Source of the DNA: Takakia lepidozioides
Taxonomy: Eukaryota; Plantae; Bryophyta
Direction: 5' to 3'
Assembly: GCA_030704615.1 (NCBI GenBank)
Contig: CM060733.1
Coordinates: 46,314,001 to 46,378,000 of the forward strand
Length of the DNA: 64,000 bases
Shown here: piece by piece, positions 8,112-57,144 of the stretch
Position numbering within the stretch: position 1 is the stretch's first letter
Layout of the letters: the number at the start of each line of letters is the position of its first letter
The notes under the pieces: generated by a model
The model's input: only the letters and a program-made list of their open reading frames with translations
The model's database searches: none
What the model was told of the DNA's origin: nothing
Translations under genes and position numbers: made by a program

Positions 8112-13599
<5,488 letters not shown>

Positions 13600-36493: not shown

Positions 36494-37014
36494 GCCTCTC
36501 ATTTTAAGATAATAGCGTCTTCAATGGGCACGTACGAGGTGGCCGATGGGCCCCGCGCATGGACGCCCGGCTCACCCCACCCCGCCCACCCCGCCCTACC
36601 CACAGCTGCGCGCGGTCGCCCAGCCGCGGGTGCGGTTGCAGCAACTGCGCCCGCCCTGCCCGCGCCCCTGTCTGCCGCACAGCCAGTCCCCCACTCATGA
36701 GTCCGCTGCCCTCCAGTCTGCAAGTCCACTGCCCAGCAGTCTGCCAGTCTGCCAGTCCGCTACCCAGCAGTCTGCGAGTCCGCCAATCTGTCCGCCAGTC
36801 CGTTGACGGCGCAGGATCTCCACTGTCCATTCCCATAATCCATCCGAGCCTCAATTTTTAGGGTTGCAATTCAAACCTTTATCCCTGCCACTTGCTACTT
36901 GCCAGCAGCCGCGAACGTGCGCACTGTGCTCCTGGCACGTTGTCGATCGTGTCCTGGGTACTACGGCGCATTTCTTGCAGGTTCAGAAGCGTGTCCTTTG
37001 TATTGTTTTAGGGC

Positions 37015-39235
37015 ATGGACGTGGAAGTAAAACCCGATGATATACTGATCACGGAAAGCCCGCTTATACGACCTCTTCGACAATGTTTGCAAACACCAAA
37101 ATCAGAACCCTTCAACAGGAAGGATCTCCATTGGAAGAGTGAGACGCAATATGGGTTTATGGGTGAGCGAGTGAGTGTTGAAAAGGCCTGCATACCTTGG
37201 GATAGAGTTGGCGACTTTGTCCTGGGAGAGGAGAGTTTGGAAGACTACCCCACTCAGTTTTGGGTGAATGTCCATTCTAAAGTGGAACCGGCACGTGAAA
37301 AGCGCCCAGAGCCAACACATTTTTGTCCAGTATTATGTATGCACCATCCTCAGTCCTTTTGATGTTTCATTGCATGTCTGTTGTCATTTTTTGTTTCACG
37401 AGTTCTCTGATTTTATGCTTCCACAAGTCGTTGGATATCGATTTTTGAATTTTATGTCCAAGTATCAATGCTGCTACGGTCCTTATGACAAACGCACCAA
37501 CAATGCAATAGTGGAGGATCCAAAACTGAAGCGTGGAGGACCTCTTGTGGGTAAGGCGCAAGGGCCCAAGGAGAAAGAAGTCGGAGTATGGAGAGTCTTA
37601 CAAGCGTGGTTGTCAATGCCGTTTCAAGGTCCAGCAATGCTATCTCGCCCCTGACATCTGTGTCATCACGTACTACAACAACATGGAGCATACAAATGCG
37701 CAAGGGAAACCCTCGCATGGGAAAGTCCGCTGAGTTCAGGAACACCCACGCCTATGCACCACACATTAGCGAGGAATTGAAAGCCTGGGTCGTCGAGTGT
37801 TTGTGCCGAGGCCTGTCGGTCGCCCAAATCATGATGGAGCATAAAGAGCACGTGATGAACGACACCGGCTTGGGCGATGCATGGACCCGTAATGATTTAT
37901 TGTTGGAGCAAGATGTTCGCAACCTTGCTGAGAAACGTGCGTGGCAAACCTTCAAAAAGCACGCCGATGATGCGGAGAGTGTGCGCATGTGGAGAGACTA
38001 GAATCCTGCGTCCGTTTTTTTCTATCAAGAGGAGAAATTAGAGCCAACATTCGAGCATTTTGATGGAGATTTGACATTCACTATTGGCATAGAGACTCCG
38101 TGGCAGAAACAACAAATGCTGGAACTAGGACATGCCCATATTGTTGCATGCGATGCAACCTTTGGGACAAATCATGACAAGGTACTATTCAAACAATTCC
38201 ATGGACTTGTGGGAGCATGATAGCATAGTACCATGCAGCATTTACATAAAATTTGGTGTGCTGACCCTTTCTGTATATTTTCATGTGTACGTTGCGGAAG
38301 ACCGAGGGGCAGACCCACAGTGAACCGCTACAAACCTCATCACTCTTATGAAGTCTTCTGGTATAGAACTAAGCGGAATTTGCATGCTCTGACCATCTGA
38401 CATTGTGCATTCCAACAGTTCCCATTGTACACGTTGATGGTCTTTGACAAATGGATTGAACGGTATACCAGTTGCCTATATCCTATCCGCGAAGAATCGG
38501 GCAACAAACCTGGTGCCGTATATACTTGCGGTACGAGACATCCCTGCTGAGAATGTTATTCTTCCCTTGAGTCCTGGTGAACCAGCTACATTCTCAGCAG
38601 CAACCACCCCGGCACAACATACATTGTTTACAATCCTGATTGCGATTGGGCTTGTTGCACGTGCCCATGGGCAATGAAGGGAAATTTATGCAATCATCAG
38701 GTCCGTGTCCTGAAGATGTTGCACCCTGACCTGCAGGATGGCCTCCTTGTGTGCGCTTGTGGCACGGTGCTGGGAACCATTCATGGAGGATTACCTAACT
38801 TGCTCTTGGGCAATGGTGCCGGTGTCAATGACGAATCCAATCAGTTCATTGAAAGACCTCCTCCGGACAACTTCCCATATGACGAGGCACCTCTGGAGGT
38901 CTCAGCCTCAAATGGAACAAGAATTCGCGGGCATACTTCGCATTGTAGGTGATGACAAATACCTGGAGGCACATGCCCGATCTGCTCTTCATATGTGCAA
39001 AGGGCAGCTCGTTGATATCATGGCGAAAAGTGCGGCTGGAATGTTGCACCCTGCGGCAACGAAGGCTTTCCGTCCTCTGAACGACAACAACAACATGTCT
39101 CTAAAAAGGAGACGAGATTTCGTGGAGGCCTGGAAAACCCGCCGTAGGGTTTGCGGAGAACCACCAAGAGGGTGTCTGCACCTGCACCTGCAGCACATAT
39201 ATACTCGAAAATTCGCAAGGTTTCAAGTCGTGTAG
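37015..39235 (+). pseudogene. Element A SWIM/MULE-type transposase
   Basis: IPWDRVGDFVLGE, KRGCQCRF, AYAPHISEEL, ACDATFGTN, PLYTLMVFD, GIPVAYIL, SWIM CTCPWAMKGNLCNH. Stops, frameshifts and an internal deletion at about 38538. Confidence 0.85.
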
Positions 39236-39399
39236 GTGTCACCAAAAAGACAATATAATTCTGCAATTCCTGTGGTAGCATTGTCCATTTCTGAAATACA
39301 AGTCCGTCCACTTTCATGTGCACATTAACAGTACTCATCTACAGTCTCCACAATCCCAGCAGACTCCGGCACAAACTCCCATCAGACGGCTACAGAGTC

Positions 39400-39490
39400 C
39401 CCCAACGGACTCTTGCACAGTCTCCCAACGGACTCCCACACAGTCTCCCAACGGACTCACACACAATCTCCCAACAGACTCACAGTCAGC
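39400..39490 (+). repeat. About 23-bp tandem repeat x4 (CAGTCTCCCAACGGACTCNCACA)
   Basis: Directly visible units carrying the GACT/AGTC motif. Confidence 0.8.
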
Positions 39491-39949
39491 AGACTGCGCA
39501 CGCCAGTAAGCCACTCCGAACGTTTGCTCACCACACTCCCACCTCATCCCTGCAAGTCTCCCAGTGGACTGCTGGACAGACTAAGTATCAAGCAGACTCA
39601 TCCACAACAACAGACTCAAAATGGACAGGCTCCCAATGGACTACCTCCCTAACGACTCATGCCAATCCAACGTCCCAGCGGACTCATGGACATGGTGCCT
39701 ACCAGACTAGGTACCAGACCCACCAGTCCCAGCCTCGGCAGCATACTGCTCGTACATTCAAGCTCAGCAGACTCAGATGCACAGTGCATGAAAAAATTGA
39801 GACCATTGTGTCCATTGAGTTTAGTGACAACAATACAAAACATGCCAGCACCCACAGTACACAAAAGTGTTCATCAATCACCATTGGAATAGTAAGCGAA
39901 AAGACTCGCATTTTTTATTTTGGTACACAGACTTCACAGGACAAGTACA

Positions 39950-42110
39950 TCATACTCATGAGAGCAGTTTATCTAGATTGTCCAACCCCCGCACGATATA
40001 CTAGGCACACTGCATTCGCTGCCCAAGTGCAAACTTGAAAGTAAACCAGTCCTTCGTGAAAGGTGTTCCTCTCTCTGGCTTTGCAGTCTTGGAGACATTT
40101 CCTCTGACTTTTGCCCACTCATAAAACACTTGAATGAATGACATTTCTCGTGCCACTCCGGTGAGTCCATCGAGTACCGTAAGCACTCAGCATGAAGCTT
40201 CCGAATCCACCCTAGAACAAAGGGACAACTATGCATGTCCCTGATAGAGTTCAGGTGAGTGTAACAGCCCTTGCGGAGGTCGATGATACAAACACTCCAG
40301 TGCCCCCTGCAATGGTATCAAACAACATGGCGTCATTGCACAGTCATGATGGGCAAACTCAGCAGACTGACACCCAGCAGACCGAGCACTCAGCAGACTC
40401 AGCACTCAGCTGACTCAGCAGACTCAATCTTCAAACCCAGTCCACTGGACAAATACAGAGGTCAACTTAATTGCTCAGAGTCAAGAGGACACTGCGAAAC
40501 CAGACTCTGACTCATGAGACTCAGTCTCAGCAGACTCGGAAGAGTTCTTACTCGTCCCCAATTGGCACCAAAATGAAATCGCACTCTTTCAAGTCCTTGC
40601 CCAGTCATTCAATGTTGAGGCAACATTTGAAGACCTCCAGAAGGCTTTCATGTTGCCCTGCCCCCAATGACTTCAACACCGTCCACGCCGACGTTGGAAG
40701 AATAGCAATAGTCTTGGTGAACGCATCCTCAACCGACTTATCATAGAATCGACAACTCAACCTTCCGGAGCGCCTTTATGTCATCCGGCGATAATCCGCA
40801 TTCAAACCGTGGGTCCCCTTCAAAAAAATCAGCACATTGGAATTACCCGCCTTTGACGTGCATAGCATGTGCTTTGCCAAACCGAGCACCCATCCTGCAC
40901 AGAGCAGACCATCCTTCGGGAAGCCTCATGTACTGAACAAACTGACGTCAACATGGTACCAAACACTCTACAGGCTTAATAGTTCATTAGTAGACTGAAC
41001 ACTCACTTCCGCATGAGAGGGGAAAACAAGAAAGTGGAAGAGACCCACTTCTAATAGACTTCCGGCACAACAGACAGAGAAAATGAGGAGTCCCACAGAC
41101 TGATTTCACAACAGACAAACTTCCAGCAGACTGTAAGTTCAACAGACTAACGCTGAAACTGATTGAGACGAAGCGGCTTCATATTGGAGGCACTTCTTTG
41201 CCAGCAGACACACTGCGAAGAGACTGGCGGCAGAACAGACTGACAAAGTACCAGGCGAACAGACTGATATCCATCGGGGAACGATTGTCGAGCACACCTC
41301 CGGTTCAGCAGACTGGTTTGCAAAGAAGCGGGCAGAATGAAGACAAAAGTGAGTAAGGGGAGAACAGGAAAGTCGAACACACCCATTGCAAACAGACTCT
41401 CGGCACAATAGACTGATGCATGCATAGTCCAACAGACTGATATCCATAGAGAAGAATTGTCCAGCAGACGGACGTTTCGCCAGACTGGCAGGAGAACAAG
41501 CCAAAAGACTGACCGGAGGGAAAACAAAAAGTCGAACAGACTTACTGCAACAGACTTCCGACACAGCAGACTAACAAATTTACAAGTGCGACAGACTGAT
41601 ATCCCAACAGACGGACTTCCAGCAGACCGCCTCCAAACTGACTGTTATGCACGCGATAAGGGGAATATCCGGAGCACTGACGCGCCAGCGGACCCACTGC
41701 GAACAGACTCGCGGCACAACGGACCTCAAACATCCACGCGCATATGCGGATGCAATTGTCTCAGCTTGGTCCGTCTCCTGGCAAATGCGACATTGTACCG
41801 ATTCTGCACCTACTTCCGTCGTGGGTCAGACATCTGCATTCAGCAGGTGCGTGTGGATGTTTGAGGACCTTAGGACTGGATGGTGTTCCGTGACGACTTG
41901 TATTGCTTTTTTGTGCTGCCATCCTTTATATAATACCATGTGGATCCATCACAAAGCTGGGTTTCTTCATATTCTCCACCATTTTCCACAACTTATGCAT
42001 GACGGATGGAAGCCGCTATACTTGGTCACATAAACAGTCCCATCGTCCGATACAAAATCTATAATACAAGCCCCCATGTGCATACGCTTCCGCCATTTTC
42101 GCGCCCATGT
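39950..42110 (-). pseudogene. Element A cargo gene: N-terminal Cys finger ... Ulp1-like protease
   Basis: MAEAYAHGG, VQCRICQ...RGC..VVP, IAILPTSAWTVLK...GKDLKECDFILVPI and FTKDWFTFKFA are all colinear with the element B cargo gene. Confidence 0.7.
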
Positions 42111-44532
42111 TACCCATGGGTTCCTTTAACGAACTAAACTTGTGAAGGCTCTCATGAGGGATGTAGTACGAAGGGGCTAAACGTATCATGACGAATCACA
42201 AGTAGAGGACGTTATCGAGGATAGATGTCCGCATTTTCTATATTTATGACATAGAACCACACCATAAAACGAAGGTTCCCGAAAGCACAACAAGAAGGCA
42301 AAAATAGTGGAAGCATATACACGATGGTGGCTGTAGTGCCGAGACAGTCCTCTCATGTTCAAGCACACGCTTCATCATCATCATGGACATCGCACGCAAA
42401 AGAGGAACAGTCGCGTGCATGGAAACGCCTACCGCAACATCGGACAACAAAGAGCCGTCAAAAGAGAGAGGCCGGGATTTGGTGGCAAGATCATTGCCAT
42501 TTTCGCAGCCCTAAAAATGGAGGGCTCGGATGGGTTATGGGAACGGACGGTGGAGATCCTATGCCGTTAGTGGACTCGATGGCAGCGGATTGGCCGGCAG
42601 CGGACTGGCGGACTGGCAGACTGGAGGGCAGCGGACTCATGGGCGGGGGACTGGCTGCGCGGTGGACGGGGCGTGGGCGCTGCTGGTGGGGCGCGGTTGC
42701 TGCAGCCGTGCCCGCGGCTGGGCGACCACGCGCAACGGTAGGCGAGGCGGGCGGGGCGGGCGGGTGGGGTGAGGCGGGCGTCCGTGCGCGGGGCCACCAG
42801 CCACCTCGCACGTGCCCATTGAAGACGATATTATCGTAAAATGAGAGGCACACACAACGCCTCTCATTTTTGAATAATTGGGAGTTTATGTCGTGCGTGT
42901 GGGACAGGGTGCGCACGCCCGCACGGACGCGGGGTCGCCCTCCTCCGCCCCGCCCACCCCCACCTGCCAGCTGCGTAGCGCGGTCGGCAGCCCCGCAGCC
43001 GCCCGCGGCCCTGCCCGCACGCCGCCCAGCCCGCCCCCAGACCACGGCCCCCGCCCGCCCGCCCTCGCTGCTGGGTCCGCCCGCCATCGGGTCCCCAGTG
43101 GGTCTGCCCTTGTTGGGGTCTGCCCAAGCTCGGTCTGCGCATGTCGTCCGGCAGACCACCCCAGACCGGCACAACAGACCCAGACCTACGTGGCGCGCAT
43201 CTGCCCGTCCAGATCTGGTTTATCCAGACCGTCCGGGTTTAGGGCATGGCACTCGCCGATCTCCTCAGACCCCCTTTGTTTTTTTTTTTTTTTTTTTTTT
43301 CTCGTGTTGTTTGCTGCTGTTTGTTGTTTGACTGTTTAGAACCAACAGACTTGGCGGTTGTGCGGAATCCCTTTGCATGACTCCATGGACTCTTTGGCAA
43401 CGTCGGAGTCCATCATTTCAAGCCACAGCCTTTTTTGTTTGTATGCTTCTACTATTTTTGCTTTGTTGTTCGCGTATTCGTGGGACTGTTTGAGCGCGGG
43501 GAAGTGAGTTACATTGAGTTTACAGTGTAGACTTGAATGGAAGTATTTAGGTCTTTGCTAACAAGTCAACTCATTTAGCGGACAGCAATTGAGAATCGGC
43601 CTTTCCCTTGTCACACTGTCTTGTTCGAGGCTTGTCCTCCATATAGCATGTGTGGAATGGCATTGCAAAAATAACGGAAGCATATGTGCATGGCTGGCTG
43701 TATAAAATTCTGATTTCCTCCCGAGTTCCGTCTCTTGGATGTTGTTTGTAGGTGGACCCATCGATGCAAGACGAAATGGGCATGTGTGGCAGAATTTTTT
43801 GTGCAACGAACCAGTGGACCTTCCAAGTGTTACCATGACAGTGCGGGGATGCAGAGACCCAGCCGGGGGACCATTGAAATGGTGAAATGGGTGGGGACAC
43901 ACTGCAGACAGAGGGCAGAGCGGGAGAAGAGAAGAGTGCACCATGCCAGTCCAGACGAGAAGACCGAACCAACAGACCAGCCTGGAGAACTCTGGTCAGA
44001 CCCTGACGGCAGACCGAGTGCAGACAATCTTTGCCTCACGAATGCGACAGACCAGTGGCACAGACCCTTTTGGCAGACCCTTTTGGCGGACCCTTTTGGT
44101 GGAGACTTAGGGCAGACCATGGAAGTCCTTGGTGGCGGCCATTATTGTGCCTCCGGGACGTTTGATGTTTCGACGGCAGTCCAATGGCCGACGTGCATGG
44201 CCTCGGCGGTCGCACGCGTGCTCATGTCACACTTAGCAATGAGCCGTTACGTTGGGGTCCTTGCCTCTTCCTCCTCTTGCGTCTTTCGCGTCTCTCCACT
44301 TTGCGACTGCACGGTGTGTTGCGCTTCATGGTTTTTGCCTCTTCGACTCGACGATTCGTTTGTAGCGCCCGCCCGCTCTTCAAAGGCCGCGTGCCCGTCG
44401 TTGCCGAAGTGCAAAGGTATCAACTTCACCAGACTTCTTCACCGCCAGACCTTCATTTCCTTTTTTTGCTTGCTCTTCTTCATTTGCATTTAGCAGACCG
44501 TCTCTGACACAATTCCTCCTTAGGTTCCAGCC

Positions 44533-47195
44533 ATGGAAGAAGCTTGCCCAAAAGGCGGAGCCGATTGGGTGGAATATGTGCATGCCCCTCGCCACAAAGC
44601 CAAGAGAAGGTACTGGTATGAGCCAAGTGAGTACGATGCTAAAATAGTAGAAGCATTTTTGGACTTGCGCGAAGCGAAGGAGAAAGAGAACTGGCCAAAG
44701 GATCGGTTTCAGTGCCCCTTTTGCCCCGATATTGTCAAGGACAAAGAGACTCTAAACCGCCATGCCCTTGATGGAGGATGCAAAGGTATGGTCCCTGAGA
44801 ACTTCAAGCCTTGGCCCAAGCCAAGTTCGTCTAAGGCCGCAAAAGAAATCACTGCAAAGTATAGGGGTGCGCATGTCGTCGCTCGATCTGCTGAGGAAGT
44901 GCGGCAACGTTATTACACTGAAGCCGGCCTACTAGGCCCCGGCCTCGTTGTGCCAGTGAAGAAAATGAAGCTCAGTGATGGAGCTAAGAAAAATGTAGAC
45001 CACAAAAGTCACAGATCTGGCAGTACCAGTACTGGCAGACCACGGGATATGAGAGTGAGTAGCAAAGAATTGCAACCAGGTCAGTCCCAGCAGACCAACA
45101 CCAGCGGACCACAGGCTGCCGTTTTAACTTTGTCGTCCAGTGGGGATGACTCAAGTAAGGAAGACTCTCATGAAGAGGAGGATCATGTTCAGGACATGTC
45201 GACGGAGCGGCCGAGACTACTTGTGAGACCGTACTTGGTGAACGACCCCATTGGGTACGCCCCGCCGGTACATGACCTAACCCTTGACTCGGACATCCCC
45301 ATGGAGGAATCACACCCTCAAACAGACCCACGACGCCCACCACATATCAGACCCAACAAGCAGACCAAGAAACAGCAAACCCTGACTGACGCTCATGGAG
45401 ATGTAACGGGCACCCCTGTCCGCCCTGGCACATTATACCTGCTTCCCCACGGTTTTCTACCAGACCAGTACCAAGATGAATCAGATCCGGACTTTTTCCC
45501 TTTTTTGTATGCTTATGTGAGATCATGGCAGATACAGCAGACCATTGACAAGCCGAGAAGAAGTGGGTGGAGGCACGATCACACCCAAGGGATGAAGACT
45601 ACAACGGCCTCCAGGTACTTGAACCACTCTTTCTGCCGTCTACCGTATTTGAATCTTTCGATTTCCTGGTTGCAATTAGTGATATGCTATGCTGGGTGTT
45701 GTATGTGTGGCCCGCTGCTGTCGGTATACTGTTCTGGGTTTGCTATTCTGTACATGGTACTGCATTACTTATTCTGGTTGTGGTTTGCTCTATAGGTCCA
45801 GAACCGTGTGACTACTTTCCTCTGTTGCAAATCATAATGTTTTATTATTATTATTATATATGTGGTCTGCTACAAACCGTCTACTGTTTTGGGTCTGCTT
45901 TGCATAACATGGTACTGCAGTTGCTTTGAAAGGCGCACTACTGCCGTGGCTGTGGTTTGTTGCATGGGTCCACGGCTATGGTCTACTACTATGCTCTACT
46001 GGTCTACTGTAATGGCCTACTGGTGTATGGTCTACTGGTCTGCTGTCAGGCCCAATCTACTAGTCTATGGTCTACTGCTCTATGGTCTACTGGTCTAATG
46101 TGAAGGCCAATATTGCTGTTTGTTTTCAGGAGGCGAATGCGCAAGACAACCGAGTGTACAGGGCTTTGCAAATCTGGAAGTACAGGTTGAACGGTCCTCC
46201 CTTGGAAAATACACTTGTCCGGAATGAGGTCCGTGATATTCGTGACTACATCCTGAGTCTGTATCCACAGACGGCTGATGCCATTGCATCAATTCAGGAT
46301 GGTACCACTGGCCGCGCAACAGGCCTCCCTCCATCTGTTGTAAAGGCTTTTGAGAGCGTCGGTCAGACTAGTAGTCCCGGCTCAGTGGACCTTTCTTCCG
46401 TGATCCGTCCTCCAGCGGACCTTCGTACATCTTTAGCAGACCCTCAGCAGACCACATTGCGTGGTCGAACTGTTTTCCCATTTGGCAGACCATGGCGTCC
46501 TCCACAGCGGTCTGCAACTGATGAGGAGGACCCCACTCTTCCGAAGTTTCGTTGTGGGGACAACAATCGGCATCTGGACTGGTACAATGAGCTTCACCAC
46601 ATCGTCGCCTCCCGGTGGACCTTTTCTCCACAACACTCCTCAATGGAGTTCACGGCGGAGGAGGCGACTCGTATTTTTGACAAAGCCCGTGAGTATGGAG
46701 TGGCGTTTCTGGCAGAGGAGACCGAGCCACCGCTTATTGCGCAACTCTTTCTCATGCACAACCCACGCCCACTGGAGATAAGGCACATGACCATCGCCCA
46801 CCCAATATTTGGTGTTCGTCCAAAGCACTTAGCGAGCTTGACAGAAACTACTTTTGAGGAGATGGCAGATTGTTTCCTACGCCGTCAATGGATGCAATTT
46901 GGCAATTTCAGGTCTTACACCAAATTAAAAAAAAACCTTCATAACTTGCGGATGGACCTGCTGCACGGAAGCGAAGAGGCTCGGGAAAGTATCACGCAAG
47001 ACGCCATGATGTGGTTTGTGACTGTGCAGGAGCGTGCAGTTTTCGACATTGCATTCAACAAACGACATGCTTTCCAAGTGCTCTGGAGCGGGTTTCCAGC
47101 AGAGGACCGTGTTGCAGCTCTGGGAGAGCTTGACGAGGCCTTCATGGATCAGCTTATGAAAGATATTGGACTGTGGACCACAGTCCTAGATCATG
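44533..47195 (+). pseudogene. Element B cargo gene, 5' half (CxxC...H...C finger plus unknown helical domain)
   Basis: ORFs of 420 aa and 389 aa; FQCPFCPDIVKDKETLNRHALDGGC; probable intron 45615-46129; phase-1 donor at 47196. Confidence 0.65.
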
Positions 47196-47460: not shown

Positions 47461-48724
47461 GTCTGTTTTCACAAGAGTAAGCATTTTCCTTTGCCTTTGG
47501 CATGTACGGAAGGCCTGGGTCAAGCAATCATGCCAGAAAATCAGTGATCCGGGAACATCCTCGAAACTGTTGGTAGATATGGGCGACCTTATGTACTGCA
47601 GAGGTGGACTGCAGAAAGAAGACGAAGCTGTGAAATGGGTTAAGAAAAAATTGAAGGCAATGAAAAAGAAATATCCGTCTGGTCAGTTGTTCCTCCACTA
47701 CATTCATGTGTACTGGGTTCCCAAAATCGCTATGTGGTGTACTGTTGCCCGCAACATTCCACATGCAAGCCAAGATACTAATGCAAGCATCGAGGCATAC
47801 CACGGAAACTTAAAGGCAAGACTTAATATGGGCAAAGGCAAAATGACCGGTCGAAGAGCCGATTGGCTCATATGGGAGTTGACTGGGCGTGTACTGGTCC
47901 ACTACTGGTACGGCATTCATCTGAAGACGTATGGGTTTATTCGCAACGATAAACAGGAAAAACACATTTCCAGTGCAATATGTGCAGCCCGTGACATACC
48001 TCTTTCACGTGTGACTTTGCCTGCAGCGCCTGGGCAACCTGCTTACATGATCAGCTCCTCCGATCCGAATACAACGTGCACCGTGTTCAATCCAGAGTCG
48101 CAGTGGGCCTGCTGCACCTGCCCGTGGGCGCTGAAAGGCAATTTGTGCAAGCACCAGGTTCGGGTCATAAAGTTGTTAAAACCAGACCTGCAAGACGGTC
48201 TTATCGTCCGGACATGTGGTTCCCACTTCGGTACTGTTCACGGTGGGCTGGAGAATTTGGACGAACACGACGACATGGCAGCATGCGACCTCAAAAGTGG
48301 TAACGTGCGTGCAAGCGCAACCCCGAACACGACAGAGTCATTGCTCACGGCAGACCTGTTGGAAGCTATTTTGAAACGGGAGATAACCGACCTGCTTGAC
48401 CTTGTACACAACGACACATACCTTATACACCATTGCTTGTCTGCGGTGCGTGTTTGCCGAGGGCAGATGCAGGACATCCTCGTCATAAAAGCTTCCGGCA
48501 TGTTACACCCGGCTGCAGCACGAGCGTTCAATCGAGTAAAAGACAACAACAACATGTCATTGAAGAGGAAAAAAGATTTTGTTGAACATTTTCAAGCTCG
48601 GCGGAAAATGAAACTAAATGGGGGGAAACGTGTGTCTGCCCTTCCCCCTGTTAGCCATATTTACTCGGCTCTAAGGCAGGTGTTTCATCGTCCAGAACTG
48701 AGAAAGATGGATCAATCTAACTAA
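47461..48724 (+). pseudogene. Element B transposase, C-terminal half
   Basis: LCLWHVRKAW (CxxH), DTNASIEAYHGNLK (catalytic E region), SWIM CTCPWALKGNLCKH. Uninterrupted ORF. Confidence 0.88.
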
Positions 48725-48762
48725 GGACAGGACCTGCAGTTGTCCAATGCGGTAGATCAATT

Positions 48763-49015
48763 CTCACCTGCAGTAGACCAGATCGGCAGACCATTATTGT
48801 AGACCACCTGCAGTAGACCAAATCGGCAGACCGTTATCGCATACCACCTGAACTTGTAGACCAATTCGGCAGACCATAATTGCACACCACCTGAAGTAGA
48901 CCAGATTGGCAGACCGTTATTGCAGACCACCTGAAGTAGACCATTTCGGCAGACCATGATTGCACACCACCTGCAGTAGACCACCACTGACTTGTAATAG
49001 ACCAATGCGGCAGAG
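48763..49015 (+). repeat. About 40-bp tandem repeats (CACCTGCAGTAGACCAGATCGGCAGACCATTATTG...)
   Basis: About 5-6 degenerate units, each with 2-3 YAGACC motifs. Confidence 0.8.
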
Positions 49016-49145
49016 CATCTGCGACTCCCTTAATGTGCTTTTTAAAGGTTTGATGAATGAGACCATGAAGTCAAAAAATGAGCCAAAGTGAACCAGTAAA
49101 CGAATGTAGTAGAGTAATGAAGCAAGTATAGTTCAATGAAGCAGA

Positions 49146-49730
49146 CCAAAGACAATACACTCGACTAACGATGGGACTGACTTGTGCCCCACATTTAGCC
49201 GACCACCGAATTTAGTATACCACTATCTCACGGAGCAGACCAACAACCGTGGAGGTAGCAGACCAATAACATTAATTCAGTAGTAGACCACGTCGAGGAG
49301 TACTGCATACATCGACAGATCAATAACATCGGACAAGCACACCACGTGGATCACTACTCAATACAAAACGTCGACCAGAAGTAGTAGCAGTAGACCACGA
49401 CAGCAGACTCATGAAATGTTCCACAGACCATATGAAGCAGACCAATACAGTACAGGGGTAGCCCAAGACAGTACACTCGACTAACGATGGGACTAACCTG
49501 TGCCACCGAATTTGCTATACCACTATCTCATGGAGGAGACCAACAACCGTGGTCCAAACTAAGTCCACTTCGTGGAGATAGCAGACCAATCACTTCAGAA
49601 GCAGACCATGATCAGGAGTACAACATACATCGGTTCACAAGCACACCACGTGGAGCACTACTCAATACAAAACATCGACCAGAAATGTTTAACAGTAGAC
49701 CATGACAGCAGACTAATGAAATGATCCACA
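49146..49730 (+). repeat. Direct duplication with about 315-bp period
   Basis: TACACTCGACTAACGATGGGACT, CAAGCACACCACGTGGA and CTACTCAATACAAAAC each occur twice. Confidence 0.8.
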
Positions 49731-49790
49731 AAAGTGTACATCATATATAAAAATGAACAGACCTGCACCATAGACCACATGAGTGAATTT

Positions 49791-52700
49791 TCATTTATTG
49801 CCAGGCCTAGATGAAATAACCCGGACTTCGGAAGAGTCTGACACGTCCGAAATCTTCCTAGATGACAACTGTCTTTCTACAACTACATTCTTCATAGTAC
49901 TAAGTGCTTTCAAAATGTACTCAACACACTTTAGGTGTTGCCTGCAAGCATAGCGGAATGTAAACCACTTTGAGGTAAACGGTGACATGAGGTAAAAGCC
50001 ACATTCCCAAGAGAAGGGTTGTTGTGGCACTTCAGGGACATGAAAATTGAATCCAGTGGCCTCGTCCCACGACGCAGTGTGCGGCTCCAAGCCGAGACAT
50101 GCTCCATACACATTTCGTATACATGGCAATATCTCCACGGGTTTGTGCATCTCTTTGATTGAGTTCAGATGAGTTAACACGCGGAACACCCGGTCAATAA
50201 TCACCAAACTCCAATGAGACTTGCCACAACGCAGGGCGCATCAGCACAAGGGAACAGCTGCAAATCAAAATGGCAGACCCATTGAGCAGATTGGTAGACC
50301 TGGGCAGACCAATGTTGCAGACCAGTGATGGTGGACCAATGATACAGGGCAGAGAAACAGTGGTACGCATGAACGCATAGCACTTATCCATCAACTATTG
50401 GTACCAATATGTACTTGCAGGTCTTCAGGTCCTTCCCCATACGATGCACTGTCAATCCGTGCTCCACCTGCGAGCGAACCCGTTCCTGACCTGCACTCCA
50501 GTGAATCTTCACTACACTCCAAACCCACGTCGGAAAAATAGCAACATCATTATATGTCTTGACATCCAAATCCTTCTGATAAAATCTACACCACAACTCA
50601 AGCAAATCGGTCTGTAACCTCGGATTCCTATTTCTCTAGCGATTTGAGGTCCTCGGTGGAAATACTGCACTCAAACTGTGGGTCATTTTCAAAAAAGTAC
50701 AGCATTGCTTTTCCCTCAGAGATATGTGCGTTGAAAGTGGAGCCAAATCGGGCATTGCACAAACTCGGAAAAACCCTTTAAGAACCGGGCTGGCGGACCC
50801 AAAAGGACCAGACCTACAACGGATACGGTTCCGGACCCAAGGACCAGACCAACGGAGCAGGCCAATGGAGCGGACGAACGGCAGCCACATCTAACCCAGC
50901 AGACCCATGAAGTAGACCCATACAACCTTTTTGCTGCAGACCCATAGACTTGGTGTGTTCAGAGCATCGCAAGCAGACCAATGACACTTACTTTTGTTTG
51001 TTACGCAGCTCCGCAACTTCGCTCTCCAATTCCAAGCAGACCTTCCGGTCAGCACTCATGTATACTCCGGACTTCGGTTTTTTGGCAACGCCTTTTTGGG
51101 GGGAAATTGTTTTTAGCCTCGGGTATGGCACGCCATCTGGTATGCGCTTCTTCCCAGCTCTATTTGGTGAAGCAGGTTCCTCTAACTTCTTTTCCAATGC
51201 AATAGTCGCCTCCTTCATACCCTCCCGGAGCTGGTAGCTCGGCTTCGCAACAAAATTTTGTCCTGGGGTTTATTAACACTTTGTGGTCCCGTTCTAGACG
51301 CTTCCTGCACTCCATGGGTCGAACTGGCCCCTACGGTGGGGGATATCACTACTGGTACACCCTTTGTGCTTGACCGCATGTTGAGCACCTGCGACGGATC
51401 ATGAGCTAAGACCTCAGACGCCATAACCTTCACACGAATATCAGACCACAAAACATCAGCAATGACCACCCAAATGCACTGGGGAAAAAAATGGACTGCA
51501 AAAATACAATGGAATCAGACCTTTGTGGGCGCTGTGGGTGTCTGCAATTGCACCACTCCTGTGGCAGGTACATCTTCGACTACAGTGATTGGTTCCACAG
51601 AATGAGAAGGGACAGAAATATGTGCATGGGTTTCAACAAGGTCTGATGAATGGTCTACTATGGGGTCGAACATGCGGAGCACCCTATCAACGGATTGGTC
51701 TATTGCTAGTAGTGGGTCTTCAGACGAGTCGGGGTCCACAAAAGTAAGCGGCAAAATGGCCAAAGATGCATCCTCATCTGCAGTAGACCCTGCCTCTAAC
51801 AGATGGGGAAGGTCACCGACCAAACTGTCACAGTCATAGTCCATTGTTGCAATTGCAGAATTGGTCTGTACTATGGATAAATGAGCACTGACGCCTTCCC
51901 GGTTCTGTTCAGGCAGTGCTGTGTCAGAAGGTCTGTGGCAAGGGTAAGGTCCACTACCATTCTCTGCTTCTCAGCAGATGTTGCAGTGGGGGGGGGAAAA
52001 GAATTGCTCCTCTCATTTTCGGCGACTCGTATGTGCCAGGGAGGATGGGCGTTGCTTCCTGGGTTATCGCCAGGTCTCCAGATGGTCTGATGTCTTGCAC
52101 TGGCAAGGTCTGCTGATGTTGGAATGGTGAGGTGTCGGCGTCCATACCTGCGTCGCGATACACTTTTGCGGTGCATTTGTCAAGCAATGTACCAGCCAGG
52201 GTGTCCTCCGGCAAGGTCTGATCTTCTCTCCTCTGCTCCAGCAAGGTCTGATCAGGTCTGCACTGGTCAAGAAATGTCTGCTCTGAGACGGTCTGGTCTG
52301 GTATCCTCTGGTCTTTTGGGGTATGGTATGTTGTGCACTCGGATCGTCTGGAGTCCTGCGCTATGGTCTGGTCTTCTGTGGTCTGCTCTTGTCTTGTCTG
52401 ATTTGGGGTGGTCTGGTCTGATTTGGTATGGTCTGGTCTTGTCTGGTCTTGTCGGGTTTGCTGTGGTGTGCTCTGGCCTGCACTAGTCTGCTCAGGTCTG
52501 ATTTCCACTGCAGCGGTCTGCTTTGCCAAGGTGATGGGTGCCCGCTGATCTGGAAAGGTTTGTCCATGTCCGATCTAGAAGTTGTTATCTGCAAAGGTCT
52601 GCATAACCAAGGTCTCCCCAGTAATTTTGGGTAAGGTGTGCAATGCCTCCACGAAAGTCTGTTTTGGCAACGAAAGTTTTTGTCACCCACATTCTCTGGC

Positions 52701-53019
52701 TTGGGATCACTGGCAATCCAGTCGGGGGTATGCTGTTCCTTGTTCTCCGTAATCTAGTCGGGGGTCTGCTGGTTGGCATGTCAGTACTTGGGATTTGGCT
52801 GGGAAGGATCTGCTCGCTCCACAGTCTGCTCGCTGCGGGTCTCCTGGGTCTCCATGTGAGTTGGGTTCTGTGTGTCTGCTGTTGTACGAACTCCAATAAG
52901 CCTACACTTAACGGGTGACTCGACTCCAGAATGGCCACGGAGGGCTTGTAGAAGCTGCCTTGCGCCATTGGCATACTGGTCAAGAGCATTCCGAACAAGC
53001 TCGTCCTCTGGATCATACT
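49791..53019 (-). pseudogene. Element B cargo gene, 3' half: QT-rich low complexity region plus Ulp1 (peptidase C48) domain
   Basis: KYILVPIVD | HWSLVIID...HLNS...VPQQPFSWECGFY gives the His, Asn/Asp, Gln, Cys order of C48 proteases. Confidence 0.8.
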
Positions 53020-53025
53020 CTGCAA

Positions 53026-54770
53026 GACAATGAAGGCATTTGGCCGCCAGTTGGGCTTTTCCTGAAGGAGGGCATCACGCAATGCTAGCACCACGGGATA
53101 AGGTCTGATGTTCGATTGCGTGCTGACAAAATGTATGCAACCGGAATTCCGTTCAACCATTGGTCGAACACCATCAACGTGTACAAGGAGAACTGCATGA
53201 AATGACAATTTGTAATTAGCAAACCAGTGTCGTACCGACAGGAACATGGTCTACTGCAATAGGGTGAAAACGCACATGGTGTATTGCAACTTGGTGAACA
53301 CGCATAGGGTGTACTGCAACTTGGTGAACATGCACATGGTCTACTGCAACATGGTGAACACGCAAAAGGGTCTGCCCTAAAACAGAGTGCAGTGGAAGGT
53401 CTACTGGAACAGGGTATACTGGGACAGGGTCTACAACAGTTAGGTCTATCGGGATTGAGGACGAATAAGCAATGCACCACAAGAGTGTGAGACCATTGTA
53501 GTATGCTATCATGCTAGCAGAAGCCCATGGAGAGGGTCCATGGCAGACCTTGTGATGGTTAGTTCCAAATGTAGTGTCGCAAGCTACGATGCGCGCATGG
53601 CCCAAGTCCAACATCTTCTGCCGCTGCCAAGGAGTCTAAATCCCAATGGTGAAGGTCAAATCTCCATCAAAATGTTGAAATGTGGGTGCCAATGATTCCT
53701 CCTGGTAGAAGAAGACCGAGTCCGGGTTTTGATCTTTCCATATTGTGCGTCATCAGCGTGTTTTTTGAAGGTCTGCTAGGCTCGTTTTTCAGCGAGATTT
53801 CAGACATCTTGCTCGAGGAGAAAGTCGTTGCGTATCCATGCGTCTCCCAAGCCACTATTCTGCATGACGTGCTCTTTGTGTTCAATCATGACTTGGGCGA
53901 CACTCAAGCCTTGAGACAAGCATTCCATGATCCACTTTTTGAGCTCCTCGCTAATATGTGGAGCATAAGCATATCGGCTGAACAGGAACTCAGCATATCC
54001 GCCATGAGAGGGTTTTCCGGGCACATCCAGGTGTTGCATGTTGTTATAATATGTGATGACCCCAATGTCTTGAGCAAGATAACATTGCGAGACTTTGAAA
54101 CAACAGAGACACCCACGCTTGTAAGACTTGCCATATTGGCTTTTCTTTCGTCTTGGATCTTTGTGAGGATTATTGCTTCCAGCCCCAACGTCCGGACCTC
54201 CTCACTTGACTTTAGGATCCGTGACAGTCAAATTGTTGGTGCGCTTGTCCTCTGGTCCATAACAACACTGATACCTGGATAGGGTCGTATGTCATCGACA
54301 CCCATGGAGTTCTGCAAGCATGTAAGACAGCCTAAATCCTATCTACATATCATGCATGTACATGTCCGACAAGCACAAGCACAGGGCATGAACAAAGAGG
54401 CAGTGCGGGAATATGGTGCAGACATGACAGAGGTTAGATATGTGTTAGCTCTTGGAGCTCTTCGCGGTCTGGGCTTCGCGTTAACATGCACATTTATGTA
54501 AAATTGGGTGGAACATCCATCTCTACTCTCCTCTCCAAGTACAAAGTCGGGCACTCTCTGCTAGGGAATACAGGCCGTGCGGACCTGCACTTGAGAGCCC
54601 ATGTATCCAGAGCGACTCTTGTTCTTCCAGTAAAGGTCTTTGCAGGAAAATGACCCATCTTTTGGTGTTTGAAGACATTGTCGCAGTGGACGTATAAGAG
54701 AGCTTTCTGGTTGGGCATCGACGGCCGCTGCTATATACGGTGCAGTACCCCTTCGCACACTCGAAAGCAC
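53026..54770 (-). pseudogene. Element B transposase, N-terminal half
   Basis: LIRPLRQCLQTPK, DFVLGEES, YAYAPHISEELK, ACDTTFGTN, SLYTLMVFD, WRPNAFIV. Stops and frameshifts present. Confidence 0.85.
53245..53430. repeat. About 30-bp intronic tandem repeat (GGTSTACTGCAACWTGGTGAACACGCA)
   Basis: About 4-6 units in a transposase intron. Confidence 0.75.
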
Positions 54771-57144
54771 CTGCAATACGACCTGGAAAAGTGGAAGCGA
54801 AGGACGACAGCACGCACGTTCTTGGCAGGACGGAAGCGTGTTGGCAGGAACAGACTAGAGGGAGGAAAAGATCGATGAAACAGTCTTCGCCCACGATTGG
54901 CGGCGGCTACCATGCCCTAAATCCGGGCGGCTACGATAGTAGCGCGGCATCACGGTGAGATGGGCGGCACATCATCTGGGGTGCGTTTGGGTCTGCCGGA
55001 TCGGGCTGCTTGGCGGCAGACCGCGCAGACTGAGCTTGGGCAGACCCCAGCAAGGGCAGACCCACCGGGGACCCGATGGCGGGCAGACCCAACGGCGAGG
55101 GCGGGCGGGCGGGCTAGGGCCGCGGTCCAGGGGCGGGCTGGGCGGGCCCTGTCCTACACACGCGACATAAACTCACACAACTACCTAGTCCTGAGACTTA
55201 GAATATTTCAAAGATAGAGATAGATATCCATACGGGATGTCGGTGTTATTTTCTCATATTTGTAACGTGTTGTCGTATCTACATAGTATTCTGTCTACCA
55301 TGAATGTATCCATTCCTCAAATTGGTAACCACGAGCACGAGTAAGCTCAATTGTCCTAAAGAGATGTGTGGGGTGGTAATGTTTACATTTGATTCTATCT
55401 CACGCAGCACTAATGGGAGTCAGATGCAGATAGGAGCAACAAAAAGGATCTCCATATCAAACAAATGCCTATCTTGTCTATGCAGTGGATCCCTCAAGAC
55501 AGTTCTCACATACACGAACTCTCCCTACATGGATGGGGTTGGGGGACTGGATCATAACAAGAAGTCTCTTTCAAGAACTCCACCAGATGCGGCCTCTGAT
55601 TAGGGTTTCTCCGCAAAATGATGTGTACTTCAAAACCCCAACTTACCCTGCCAAAAGATGATACAAGTCATCAAGGAATTTTGCTCCATCCCCATCTTTG
55701 ACTTTGGCCCCCTACCTTATGGGGGAGGGTCTTGTTGAGCAGGTCTCCCTGCCATTTTTTCTTCACTCCCCCTTTTCATGAAAGCAATGGATTCCTCTTG
55801 GGAAGAGGGGTGGTTACATGGACGCCAAGTCTACTACTGGGGCCTGGGTCAAATCCACTCCAAAGTTGACGGCTTTAGAAGGGGTGGGGTCTCCATTGAA
55901 GGAAGGTTCTTGTATGTGAAAGTTATGGGCTAGAAGAGTTTTCAAAGGGAAGGAGGGTATGGAGAAGTTCATATCAGCAAAGTCAAGGAGGCGGCCACCA
56001 CATGAATAGAAAAAGGGTCGGGCAAGAGCAAAAACTTGGAGGGGGGAGGGATGGGAGAGGAGATCACGACACAGAAGCGCCCACATTTCGGATTTCCACG
56101 TGAGGCCATGGAAACACTACAATTGCGGAGAGACTTCCGTCTCATTTCCTGTCCTCTCCAGCATGCACTCATGCATTTACTTTTTGCAACACCCCTCCCT
56201 CCTACTTCAAAGGACAGTCTGCTCTTTCCGGATGTGCTTCCAAAAGAAAACACGTCCACAAGATGAGATCTCACGCTATACTCGAAGGAGTTGCGGCCAG
56301 TGGGTAAAGCCTGTCATTAAATCTATGACCCGTAGCGGGCCCCTACACAAATGCTGCTTTTCAGTCCCCTGAAGGAGCAGCTTTTGCATTCCTTTGGCAA
56401 TATCACTAAGACACGGAGAGTTACTGTTTCTATCATTTATAACTGCTTCTACACTTGCCAGCAGGAGAAGGAAGCTTGCTTACTAAAACTGGAATCGGGA
56501 GTGCAACTCTCACTTCATTGCTTGCTTTAAGGTGGACGGCACTTGCAGGTAACAGGGGAGCCGTGGGTCATAGCATGTTTGCAGTAACGTTTGAGTGAAG
56601 ATATCCTAGTGTGCTGTGACTCGTGTTTTGTAGCGAGATGCAAGGTGCCCGTTGGTAGACGACAACAACGCTGGTAGGAAAGGAGCATGGTATCAGCCAC
56701 GACTCCACTCAAACTGTGTTTATGACATCCAATCAACCTAGCCCGTACTCAAGCATATCAAGACCCAATTTGCACTTGGAACTTCACATTTACATGCCCC
56801 AACATCGTCACTTAAAGAGCTGTCAACTCTGACCCCCATGCCTGCACCGCACTTCTGCTGTTCTCACAGTCCAACCAGCATTGTCCTTCCAAGTAATCTA
56901 GAATCGTGGGCTATGTACAAGACAAACATCTGTACTCATCTGTCACATGTGCTCTATGCATCGCCATCCCAGATCACGTCGTTTTTGGTCTAAGACACCA
57001 CTTGCCTCATTGCTAAAACAGTTTATTCTACATTATTCACTGAGCAGCTTGTACTACATCATACTCTAAGCTGGACAAGAGTCGAAGTGTACAATCTTCG
57101 TCTGCAAGTTGCAGTTGGCTATGCAGCCTGCTTCGACAAACCTC

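What the first reader, a model, noticed from the sequence alone, without database searches (positions are those of the whole stretch)
36494..55174. Two long-TIR transposons whose transposase resembles the domesticated plant SWIM genes At4g13970/At1g60560
Seen: both elements have long GC-rich TIRs and a transposase with IPxxRVxDFVxGE, CxYGP, KRGCxCxF, AYAPHISEEL, TPWQ, DxTFGTN, PLYTLMVFD, CLWHVRKAW, TNxxIExYH and a SWIM finger; A also has a 9-bp TSD. From memory of the Arabidopsis proteins, these motifs follow At4g13970/At1g60560, which are static single-copy genes in angiosperms. Inference: these are mobile members of the MULE-like lineage that gave rise to those host genes. At least two subfamilies with different termini are present, each with a MuDR-like layout of two convergent genes reading inward from the TIRs.
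Basis: partly seen in the sequence, partly recalled or inferred. Interest (0 to 1): 0.85.

Follow-up and report, generated by a model that had tools for sequence, protein, structure and literature searches.

The report
Two decayed SWIM-type Mutator transposons
Two broken copies of a Mutator-type jumping gene sit back to back in a single target site of a land-plant genome, and their transposase belongs to the same protein family as a conserved, unstudied seed-plant gene family, which points to an old taming of a transposon for which I found no published description.

Summary

- **The elements.** Both are long-TIR elements of the Mutator superfamily, with GC-rich arms of about 300-400 nt.
- **Shared terminus.** They do not have different termini. 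B really starts at 42859 with the same GCCTCTCATTTT end as A. GAGTTTATGTCG is internal, and B's right arm has lost its last 23-24 nt.
- **Target site.** CACACAAC occurs at all three junctions, so A and B went into the same target site one after the other.
- **Both copies are dead.** A has lost about 200 codons, including the second catalytic Asp, CLWHV and TNxxIExYH. B carries a balanced 5.6-kb inversion (about 47440-53025) that splits both of its genes.
- **Second gene.** It is a zinc-finger plus Ulp1/C48 protease gene, as in KI-MULEs, not a mudrB-like gene.
- **Link to host genes (supported).** The transposase matches conserved seed-plant SWIM genes, annotated "zinc ion binding" or "SWIM zinc finger family protein", at E 1e-35 to 1e-37 with collinear motifs. 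Relatives pass Pfam MULE. None hits the FAR1 or MuDR DNA-binding models.
- **Limit on that link.** In the tree the window groups with TIR-bearing metagenome elements, not next to the host clade.

The scan has noted this family at eight or more other places in this genome. No paper describing it was found. Repbase could not be checked.

The parts
36486..36493 (.). Target-site copy 1 (CACACAAC; the 9th base, at 36485, is G)
   Evidence: Read directly from the sequence.
36494..42849 (+). Element A (6356 bp). It is an internally deleted, decayed copy with the terminus GCCTCTCATTTT at both ends.
36494..36880 (+). A left TIR, GC 0.64, carrying CAGTCYGC-type subterminal repeats
37015..39235 (+). A transposase pseudogene. 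It keeps IPWDRVGDFVLGE, CCYGP, KRGCQCRF, AYAPHISEEL, DATFGTN, LYTLMVFD and the SWIM finger. It has an in-frame TAG at 37999-38001, at least 3 frame changes, and a deletion of about 200 codons at 38521/38522 that removes the second Asp, CLWHV and the catalytic Glu.
39962..40827 (-). A remnant of the second gene. It has a Ulp1/C48 core (GHWSVCIID...HLNS), is frameshifted, and the catalytic Cys position reads Arg.
   Evidence: Pfam Peptidase_C48 at 20.5 bits, just below the 20.7 cut-off. Alignment to B.
42440..42849 (-). A right TIR
42851..42858 (.). Target-site copy 2 (CACACAAC; base 42850 is A), shared by A and B
42859..55174 (-). Element B (about 12.3 kb). It lies in the opposite orientation to A. 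Its true left end is at 42859 and its right end is truncated.
42859..43258 (+). B left TIR. The first 23 nt (GCCTCTCATTTTTGAATAATTGG) were previously read as spacer.
   Evidence: A-left aligns in register from 42859: score 135.5 against shuffles of 63.5 +/- 7.3.
44533..47236 (+). 5' part of B's second gene. It consists of two open frames of 420 and 389 codons (44533-45795 and 46067-47236), with a CxxC...H...C finger in the first.
   Evidence: No family was recognised.
47440..53025 (.). Inverted segment of B (breakpoints good to +/- 2 nt). Undoing the inversion joins ...NAFIV to SDFVAAC... in the transposase. It also places a TTGCAG acceptor and the exon EYDPEDEL... downstream of the second gene's 5' exons.
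47440..48724 (+). C-terminal half of B's transposase. It is open for about 428 codons and contains the second Asp (TSD), CLWHVRKAW, TNASIEAYH and the SWIM finger CTCPWALKGNLCKH.
49794..50635 (-). Ulp1/C48 protease domain of B's second gene (HWSLVIID, HLNS, QQPFSWECGFY)
   Evidence: Pfam Peptidase_C48 at 22.5 bits, cut-off 20.7.
50991..53019 (-). Middle exons of B's second gene, now inverted. They include a Gln-Thr-rich stretch built from CAGACC repeats.
53026..54707 (-). N-terminal half of B's transposase, decayed. Stop codons lie at 54561-63, 54202-04, 53800-02, 53776-78 and 53636-38, with a frameshift near 53095.
54901..55174 (-). B right TIR. It lacks the terminal 23-24 nt and an internal block of about 97 nt that is present in the left arm.
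55174..55181 (.). Target-site copy 3 (CACACAAC). Its first C overlaps the last retained base of B.

Best explanation
A and B are two dead cut-and-paste transposons of the Mutator superfamily (MULEs) in a land-plant genome.

**Intact form of the family (inferred).** It has GC-rich TIRs of 300-500 bp and an 8-9-bp target duplication. It carries two convergent genes:
- a multi-exon transposase with an N-terminal Cys/His finger, a DDE (MULE) core and a C-terminal SWIM finger;
- an accessory gene encoding a zinc finger, an unknown domain and a Ulp1/C48 protease.

**History at this locus (inferred).**
- A and B are different subfamilies. Their transposase DNA is about 67% identical. A is saturated with CAGACT and B with CAGACC. 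Both share the same 12-nt terminus.
- They integrated one after the other into exactly the same target. This leaves three copies of CACACAAC.
- The likely reason is that a transposase bound at the resident end directs the next integration to the adjacent duplicated site. This step is inferred, not shown.

**Decay (shown).**
- A lost about 200 codons of the catalytic core, with breakpoints at the short LA(V/L)RD similarity.
- B suffered a balanced 5.6-kb internal inversion that cuts both genes.
- B also lost 23-24 nt exactly at its right terminus.

**Wider family.** The transposase lineage is the mobile side of a plant-wide family. The other side of that family is three conserved seed-plant host orthogroups, the At4g13970/At1g60560 type.
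For: - **TIRs and termini:**
- **Three CACACAAC copies at the junctions:**
- **Transposase motifs, A's deletion and B's strand switch:**
- **Balanced junction** (...NAFIV | SDFVAAC...; TTGCAG acceptor plus exon on the other side).
- **Stop codons:**
- **Peptidase_C48:** 22.5 bits in B, 20.5 in A.
- **Pfam MULE above its cut-off in relatives:** the clade member P0002 at 35.8 bits, and P0155, P0170 and P0171. There are no FAR1 (PF03101) or MuDR DBD (PF03108) hits.
- **Relatives share the layout.** L001-L004 have the same two convergent genes. L003 has TIRs of about 500 bp. The same terminus has different flanks in L002 and L003.
- **Link to the host family:**. In the tree the window clade has 100* support and the host clade 99*. 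DDE columns.
- **The C-terminal half is lineage-specific.** It finds only 707 representatives at E<=1e-3 among 1.84 billion proteins, so the mass of ordinary MULE and FAR1 proteins is not matched.
- **Element-specific hexamers:**
Against: - No intact copy and no empty site were seen, so mobility is inferred from structure, from relatives and from unchecked scan notes.
- The window's own pieces are too short to pass Pfam MULE directly.
- The TSD matches at 8 of 9 positions, not 9 of 9.
- B decays unevenly. The left 10 kb holds about 1240 open codons. The right 2 kb holds 5 stops, a frameshift and two TIR deletions. A single neutral history does not explain this.
- No MuDR, FAR1 or MUSTANG sequences could be put in the tree, and the tree has no outgroup.
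Confidence: 0.85

Rival explanations
1. These are ordinary MuDR- or FAR1/Jittery-clade MULEs, and the resemblance to the At4g13970/At1g60560-type genes is only the general similarity shared by all MULE transposases.
For: All MULE transposases share the DDE core and often a SWIM finger. Embedding neighbours are generic "MULE" and "SWIM" clusters from many phyla. No MuDR or FAR1 reference sequence was available for the tree.
Against: - The C-terminal half finds only 707 representatives in 1.84 billion proteins, and host-family members score E 1e-24 to 1e-35 among them.
- Similarity to the host genes also covers the N-terminal finger and the helix-turn-helix-like exon (39% identity, E 1e-15).
- No relative hits the FAR1 or MuDR DNA-binding models.
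Confidence: 0.06
2. B is not one element with an inversion. It is either an assembly error or a patchwork of two different B-type copies: an old right end with a decayed N-terminal half, plus a younger left part.
For: The two parts of B differ sharply in decay. There are no stops in about 1240 codons on the left. On the right there are 5 stops, a frameshift and two TIR deletions. No reads could be laid on the region.
Against: - The two transposase halves abut to within a codon (...NAFIV | SDFVAAC...).
- The other pair of ends restores an intron acceptor and exon of the second gene. That fits a two-break inversion in one molecule and would be a coincidence for a patchwork.
- No long inverted repeat lies at the breakpoints that could mislead an assembler.
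Confidence: 0.12
3. The tandem A-B arrangement with three CACACAAC copies did not arise by a second integration next to a resident end. It arose either by unequal exchange between two alleles that carried A and B at the same hot-spot site, or by chance re-use of a preferred target motif.
For: The end product T-A-T-B-T is the same under all three routes. Nothing in the sequence tells them apart.
Against: Exchange across 8-9 bp of homology is rare. All three routes still need two independent hits on the same 9 bp. The two elements share the same 12-nt terminus, so one transposase could recognise both.
Confidence: 0.25
4. The inversion created a new plus-strand chimeric gene, made of the zinc-finger and unknown-domain exons plus the SWIM-bearing C-terminal half of the transposase. 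This gene is kept open by selection while the orphaned N-terminal half decays.
For: Three long open frames lie on one strand (44533-45795, 46067-47236, 47420-48724) with about 1240 codons and no stop. The N-terminal half has 5 stops. If disabling hits fell evenly, the chance that all six land in the N-terminal half is about 4e-4 (own arithmetic).
Against: There are no expression data and no second copy from which to measure constraint. The rest of the inverted segment may be equally open, which would leave only the N-terminal half as the odd part. Gene conversion from intact copies, or local methylation-driven C-to-T decay, could explain it; all 5 stops are compatible with C>T or G>A changes.
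Confidence: 0.06

Closest known systems
KI-MULEs / C48-MULEs (Kaonashi elements; Hoen et al. 2006, as described in PMC4948706)
   Same: A Mutator-superfamily transposase is paired with a second gene that carries a Ulp1-type Peptidase_C48 domain. Some clades have TIRs.
   Different: The transposase here is not of the mudrA type. It falls in the lineage shared with the At4g13970-type host genes. The protease gene also has a Cys/His finger, an unknown domain and a Gln-Thr-rich linker. The position of the catalytic Asp reads Asn (HLNS) in both copies.
VANDAL elements of Arabidopsis, e.g. VANDAL21/Hiun (from my own knowledge, not checked here)
   Same: They are multi-gene MULEs whose interior is loaded with a short family-specific motif. 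Accessory genes travel with the transposase.
   Different: VANDALs lack long TIRs. No VANC-like protein was recognised here. The motif here (CAGACT or CAGACC) also runs through coding sequence.
MuDR of maize (mudrA/mudrB)
   Same: Long TIRs, a 9-bp class target duplication, and two convergent genes reading inward from the ends.
   Different: There is no mudrB-like gene. No relative hit the Pfam MuDR DNA-binding model. The C-terminal half does not retrieve the bulk of MuDR-type proteins.
Seed-plant host SWIM genes of the At4g13970/At1g60560 type (three orthogroups, here called H1-H3)
   Same: The order of blocks is the same along the whole protein: IPxxRV, CxYGP, RGCxCHF...CHG finger, YAPxISEEL, DxTFG, LYTLLVFD, xDD, CLW(H/R)V, IExYH and SWIM. 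Identity is 29-39% and E-values are 1e-15 to 1e-37.
   Different: The host genes have short branches that follow the species tree, typically one 90% cluster per orthogroup in each species, sitting on chromosome-scale contigs. Whether they lack TIRs and a partner gene was not examined. Angiosperm H1 has lost the first catalytic Asp.
FHY3/FAR1 and MUSTANG (known MULE-derived plant genes; PMC4948706)
   Same: They are host genes derived from MULE transposases, with TE relatives still present in some genomes.
   Different: They come from different MULE lineages. FRS and MUG arose in angiosperms, whereas the three orthogroups here already include gymnosperms. No paper naming them as transposase-derived was found.

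Membership tests
Mutator superfamily (MULE) | DDE transposase recognised by the MULE domain model (PF10551) | tested here: met
   The clade member P0002 (39% identical to B's C-terminal half) scores 35.8 bits against a cut-off of 27.6. P0155 scores 44.1, P0170 52.2 and P0171 59.1. The window's own pieces are too short to score but align to the D1, D2 and E columns.
Mutator superfamily (MULE) | Terminal inverted repeats, often long (100 bp or more) | tested here: met
   A's arms are about 390 nt. B's arms are about 380 nt on the left and about 270 nt on the right. Both share the terminus GCCTCTCATTTT.
Mutator superfamily (MULE) | Target-site duplication of 8-11 bp, typically 9 bp | tested here: met
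   CACACAAC is exact at all three junctions. The ninth base differs: G, A, and lost at the third copy.
Mutator superfamily (MULE) | C-terminal SWIM-type zinc finger (frequent, not universal) | tested here: inconclusive
   CxCx(n)CxH is present in both elements. Pfam SWIM scores 17.7-17.8 bits, below the 19.6 cut-off.
KI-MULE / C48-MULE | Second gene with a Peptidase_C48 (Ulp1) domain inside the element | tested here: met
   B 49794-50240 scores 22.5 bits against a cut-off of 20.7. A 39976-40317 scores 20.5 bits.
MuDR sensu stricto | mudrA-type N-terminal DNA-binding domain (PF03108) and a mudrB-like second gene | tested here: not met
   None of 20 proteins scanned (relatives and host members) hit PF03108. 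The second gene is a zinc-finger plus C48 gene.
FAR1/FHY3-Jittery lineage | FAR1 DNA-binding domain (PF03101) | tested here: not met
   There was no PF03101 hit at E<=0.01-0.1 in the relatives or in the window's pieces. The RGCxCxF...H...CHG finger resembles that fold only by pattern.
At4g13970/At1g60560-type host gene family | Sequence similarity along the whole protein | tested here: met
   E 1e-37 to Ginkgo H1, 9e-35 to cacao H2 and 1e-15 for an N-terminal exon. Motifs are collinear. The Arabidopsis sequences themselves were not available. The identification rests on transferred names.
At4g13970/At1g60560-type host gene family | Membership of the conserved single-locus seed-plant clade (orthology) | tested here: not met
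   The window falls in a separate clade with 100* support. The host orthogroups form their own 99* clade. The window copies also have TIRs and a target duplication.
Zisupton / KDZ | KDZ-type transposase domain | tested here: not met
   No such Pfam family appeared in any scan.

The most novel reading that the evidence does not exclude
The seed-plant genes of the At4g13970/At1g60560 type form three orthogroups that already existed before gymnosperms and angiosperms split. They would be an unrecognised ancient domestication of this particular MULE lineage. TIR-bounded, two-gene mobile members of the lineage survive in non-seed plants, and a multi-copy member occurs in Taxus. Because orthogroups H2, H3 and gymnosperm H1 keep all three DDE residues, the host proteins might still cut DNA.
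Probability: 0.4. Interest if true: 0.65.

Novelty: new member of a known kind. Interest (0 to 1): 0.45.

Why it matters
**The locus.** It is a pair of dead transposons. Three features are instructive:
- two related elements share one duplicated target;
- the deletion at B's right end stops exactly at the terminus;
- the internal inversion is balanced.

All three look like scars of transposase activity.

**The family.** This is the more interesting part. It ties a conserved, functionally uncharacterised seed-plant gene family to TIR-bearing Mutator elements. That would add an older case to the short list of MULE-derived plant genes (FHY3/FAR1, MUSTANG). It also gives a concrete hypothesis for mutant and biochemical work on those genes.

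**Caveat.** The scan has already noted the same family at eight or more other loci of this genome, some apparently better preserved. This window is therefore not the best exemplar.

Tried and rejected
- **Pfam on single exons and ORFs of A and B** gave no MULE hit because the pieces are too short.
- There is therefore no read support for the junctions, no copy number and no expression data.
- **The PDB sequence search with a full-length relative found nothing.**
- **The second gene is not conserved at sequence level in the clade.** Its 5' exons have no detectable relatives in L001-L004 and only weak embedding neighbours.
- **L003 shows no target duplication.** Its two flanks may come from different copies merged by the metagenome assembler.
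- **No empty-site paralogue of the flanks exists in the window.**
- **Literature searches** for At4g13970/At1g60560 as exapted transposases found nothing, including the supplements of PMC5715367. Hoen & Bureau 2015 is not held.
- **CpG depletion does not clearly separate B's two halves:** 0.61 against 0.82.
- **Homologous recombination between inverted transposase copies** was considered as the cause of the inversion. I rejected it because it would leave two whole chimeric genes, not split ones.


Full report
**1. What is at the coordinates**

Inverted-repeat search finds two nested sets of arms. Set A pairs 36494-36783 with 42585-42849. Set B pairs 42879-43258 with 54901-55177.

A global alignment of A's arms extends to about 390 nt. 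The first 60 nt are 90% identical, and the figure is 73% over all columns including gaps. The arms are GC-rich at 0.64-0.71, against about 0.45-0.50 around them.

The terminus GCCTCTCATTTT occurs exactly three times in the window, at 36494 (+), 42838 (-) and 42859 (+). GAGTTTATGTCG occurs at 42882 (+) and 55163 (-).

**2. The termini are not different**

The 23 nt between the two "elements" (42859-42881) start with A's terminus. A's left arm aligns in register with 42859 onward, well beyond those 23 nt. For example, CGCATGGACGCC in A lies opposite CGCACGGACGCG in B only about 2 nt out of step. The alignment score is 135.5, against 63.5 +/- 7.3 (maximum 86) for shuffles.

So B begins at 42859 with the same terminus, and GAGTTTATGTCG is positions 24-35 of its arm. 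B's right arm lacks these terminal 23-24 nt. It also lacks a block of about 97 nt that the left arm has.

**3. One target site, three copies**

CACACAAC stands at 36486-36493, 42851-42858 and 55174-55181. The layout is T-A-T-B-T.

A and B are too different to be a local duplication. Their transposase DNA is 66.9% identical over 1230 nt. They also carry different internal hexamers:

| Hexamer | In A | In B | In the flanks |
|---|---|---|---|
| CAGACT | 5.2 per kb | 1.1 per kb | 0.5-0.8 per kb |
| CAGACC | 0.8 per kb | 7.6 per kb | 0.2-0.4 per kb |

(All counts.)

Two separate integrations into the same 9 bp are therefore needed. I infer that a transposase bound at the resident end steers the next integration to the adjacent duplicated site. 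A hot-spot target or unequal exchange cannot be excluded.

The deletion at B's right end stops exactly at the element/target boundary. This is what a one-sided transposase cut followed by resection and end-joining would leave. That too is inferred.

**4. The transposase genes**

Exons were handled one by one by reference.

- **Element A (plus strand, 37015-39235).**
  - Every N-terminal motif and the SWIM finger are present. CLWHV and TNxxIExYH are absent in all six frames.
  - Alignment to relatives shows a jump from ...NRATNLVPY to ILAVRDIPAENV. About 200 codons are missing, including the second catalytic Asp and the catalytic Glu.
  - The junction lies in a short similarity: VLALRD upstream and CAARDIP downstream in B.
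  - A also has a TAG at 37999-38001 and at least three frame changes.
- **Element B.**
  - The N-terminal half is on the minus strand (54707 to 53026). It carries five stop codons in conserved positions and a frameshift near 53095. All five stops can be explained by C>T or G>A changes.
  - The C-terminal half is on the plus strand inside the open frame 47420-48724.
  - Read across the two breakpoints, the protein continues ...NWRPNAFIV | SDFVAACRSVF...LCLWHVRKAW. This matches relatives to within a codon.
  - The other two ends put a TTGCAG acceptor and the exon EYDPEDELVRNAL... behind the second gene's 5' exons.
  - This is a balanced inversion of about 47440-53025 that breaks both genes.

**5. 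The second gene**

In B it has four parts:
- two long open frames next to the left TIR (44533-45795, which has a CxxC...H...C finger, and 46067-47236);
- the inverted middle exons, including a Gln-Thr-rich stretch that is the CAGACC array read as codons;
- a Ulp1/C48 domain at 49794-50635, with HWSLVIID, HLNS and QQPFSWECGFY;
- Pfam Peptidase_C48 scores 22.5 bits against a cut-off of 20.7.

A keeps a frameshifted remnant that scores 20.5 bits and has lost the catalytic Cys.

The layout of two convergent genes is seen in A and in the relatives L001-L004. B has it once the inversion is undone, in the opposite orientation to A. This is the KI-MULE/C48-MULE arrangement described in PMC4948706, not mudrA/mudrB.

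**6. Family assignment**

The word-indexed search found nine relatives, two of them with a MULE domain.

The exhaustive search with B's C-terminal half found 707 representatives at E<=1e-3, 244 at E<=1e-10 and 29 at E<=1e-30, among 1.84 billion proteins. This half therefore does not match the mass of ordinary MULE and FAR1 proteins.

Named hits include:
- eight mutually divergent proteins of the liverwort Riccia sorocarpa;
- two Adiantum fern proteins;
- a Taxus cluster of 18 near-identical members spread over many contigs;
- seed-plant proteins.

Pfam MULE passes its cut-off in P0002 (35.8 bits), P0155, P0170 and P0171. ZSWIM1-3_RNaseH-like and SWIM also appear. FAR1 (PF03101), the MuDR DNA-binding model (PF03108) and KDZ models never appear.

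The relative L003 has TIRs of about 500 bp with the terminus CCCTAACATTACC. The same terminus has different flanks in L002. This supports mobility of the clade in another organism.

**7. Relation to the host SWIM genes**

P0008 led to 528 proteins of about 700 residues from angiosperms (including Amborella) and gymnosperms. They sit on chromosome-scale contigs and are named "SWIM-type domain-containing", "zinc ion binding" or "SWIM zinc finger family protein". PMC6265505 lists AT4G13970 as "Zinc ion binding". The Arabidopsis sequences themselves could not be retrieved, so the equation with At4g13970/At1g60560 rests on these transferred names.

Pairwise results for the window against host proteins:

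| Window piece | Host protein | Identity | E-value |
|---|---|---|---|
| B C-terminal half | Ginkgo H1 | 29% over 255 residues | 1e-37 |
| B C-terminal half | cacao H2 | 31% over 229 residues | 9e-35 |
| A exon 37741-37998 | Ginkgo H1 | 39% over 80 residues | 1e-15 |

The zinc-finger, D1, D2, E and SWIM blocks are collinear in all.

A maximum-likelihood tree was built from 47 rows with the quick search and SH-aLRT support, and is unrooted. It gives:
- the window in a 100* clade with seven metagenome or Logan sequences;
- several Riccia clades, a fern clade, and the Taxus multi-copy, Cryptomeria and Amborella_809 lineages;
- a 99* clade of three host orthogroups, each with gymnosperm and angiosperm members on short branches that follow the species tree.

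The window's clade is therefore kin of the host genes, not their sister. The direction from transposon to host gene is the parsimonious reading because the wider superfamily is mobile, but it was not tested with an outgroup.

Host H2, H3 and gymnosperm H1 keep D-D-E. Angiosperm H1 has lost the first Asp.

**8. What remains unexplained**

B decays unevenly. About 1240 codons on the left are open. The right 2.1 kb holds 5 stops, a frameshift and two TIR deletions. If disabling hits fell evenly, all six landing in the N-terminal half would have a chance of about 4e-4 (own arithmetic).

Candidate explanations are gene conversion from intact copies, local methylation-driven decay, or selection on a chimeric plus-strand gene created by the inversion.

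**9. Context and novelty**

The window is from a land plant: it has two dirigent-domain ORFs and an AAA ATPase gene. Beyond that the species is unknown. The elements lie in a TE-rich stretch, next to a reverse-transcriptase ORF.

Earlier notes of this scan list the same kind of element at eight or more other places in this genome. Those notes are unchecked, but they agree with a multi-copy family.

No paper in the library describes At4g13970/At1g60560 as transposase-derived or describes this MULE lineage. Some database names already say "MULE transposase domain-containing" for host members. Repbase and Hoen & Bureau 2015 could not be consulted.

**Verdict:** these are real but dead members of a known kind of element (C48-bearing MULEs). 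They belong to a lineage whose link to a conserved host gene family appears undescribed.

Noticed in passing
window 36494-42849 and 42859-55174: Each element is saturated with its own hexamer. CAGACT occurs at 5.2 per kb in A. CAGACC occurs at 7.6 per kb in B. Both occur at 0.2-0.8 per kb in the flanks. In B the motif runs through coding sequence, where it reads as Gln-Thr repeats. The two motifs differ by one base and may be the binding site of an element-encoded protein.
   Followed up: partly
window 42859-53025 versus 53026-55174: B decays very unevenly. About 1240 codons in three plus-strand frames have no stop. The right 2.1 kb has five stops, a frameshift and two deletions in the TIR.
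   Followed up: partly
window 32215-35367, minus strand: A 650-codon ORF with a reverse-transcriptase domain (RVT_1, E 1.4e-10) lies next to a 326-codon ORF with a C2HC/C2H2-type finger. Together they look like a non-LTR retrotransposon just left of element A.
   Followed up: no
window 57145-57732 and 61518-62147, minus strand: Two dirigent-domain ORFs lie about 4 kb apart (E about 1e-15 each). This is a small tandem gene pair and marks the genome as a land plant's.
   Followed up: no
window 10501-12094, plus strand: Two exons of an AAA+ ATPase gene (AAA at E 1.6e-27, AAA_lid_3 at E 1.4e-16).
   Followed up: no
L003 68-568 and 10085-10586; L002 about 6835 onward: A metagenome relative of the element has TIRs of about 500 bp with the terminus CCCTAACATTACC. 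The same terminus has different flanks in two contigs. No target duplication is visible in L003, perhaps because the assembler joined the flanks of different copies.
   Followed up: partly
proteins P0224 and P0321-P0334 (Taxus chinensis): Eighteen near-identical members of one 90% cluster are spread over many Taxus chromosomes. This suggests a recently amplified member of the same family in a gymnosperm. In the tree it branches just outside the host clade.
   Followed up: no
host proteins P0010, P0074, P0091, P0117, P0119, P0124, P0125, P0193, P0196: The host orthogroups H2, H3 and gymnosperm H1 keep all three DDE positions. Angiosperm H1 has His or Asn at the first Asp. CLWHV has become CLWRV in most host proteins.
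   Followed up: partly
window 49794-50240 and 39976-40317, minus strand: In both copies of the C48 domain, the position where Ulp1 proteases normally have the catalytic Asp reads Asn (HLNS).
   Followed up: no
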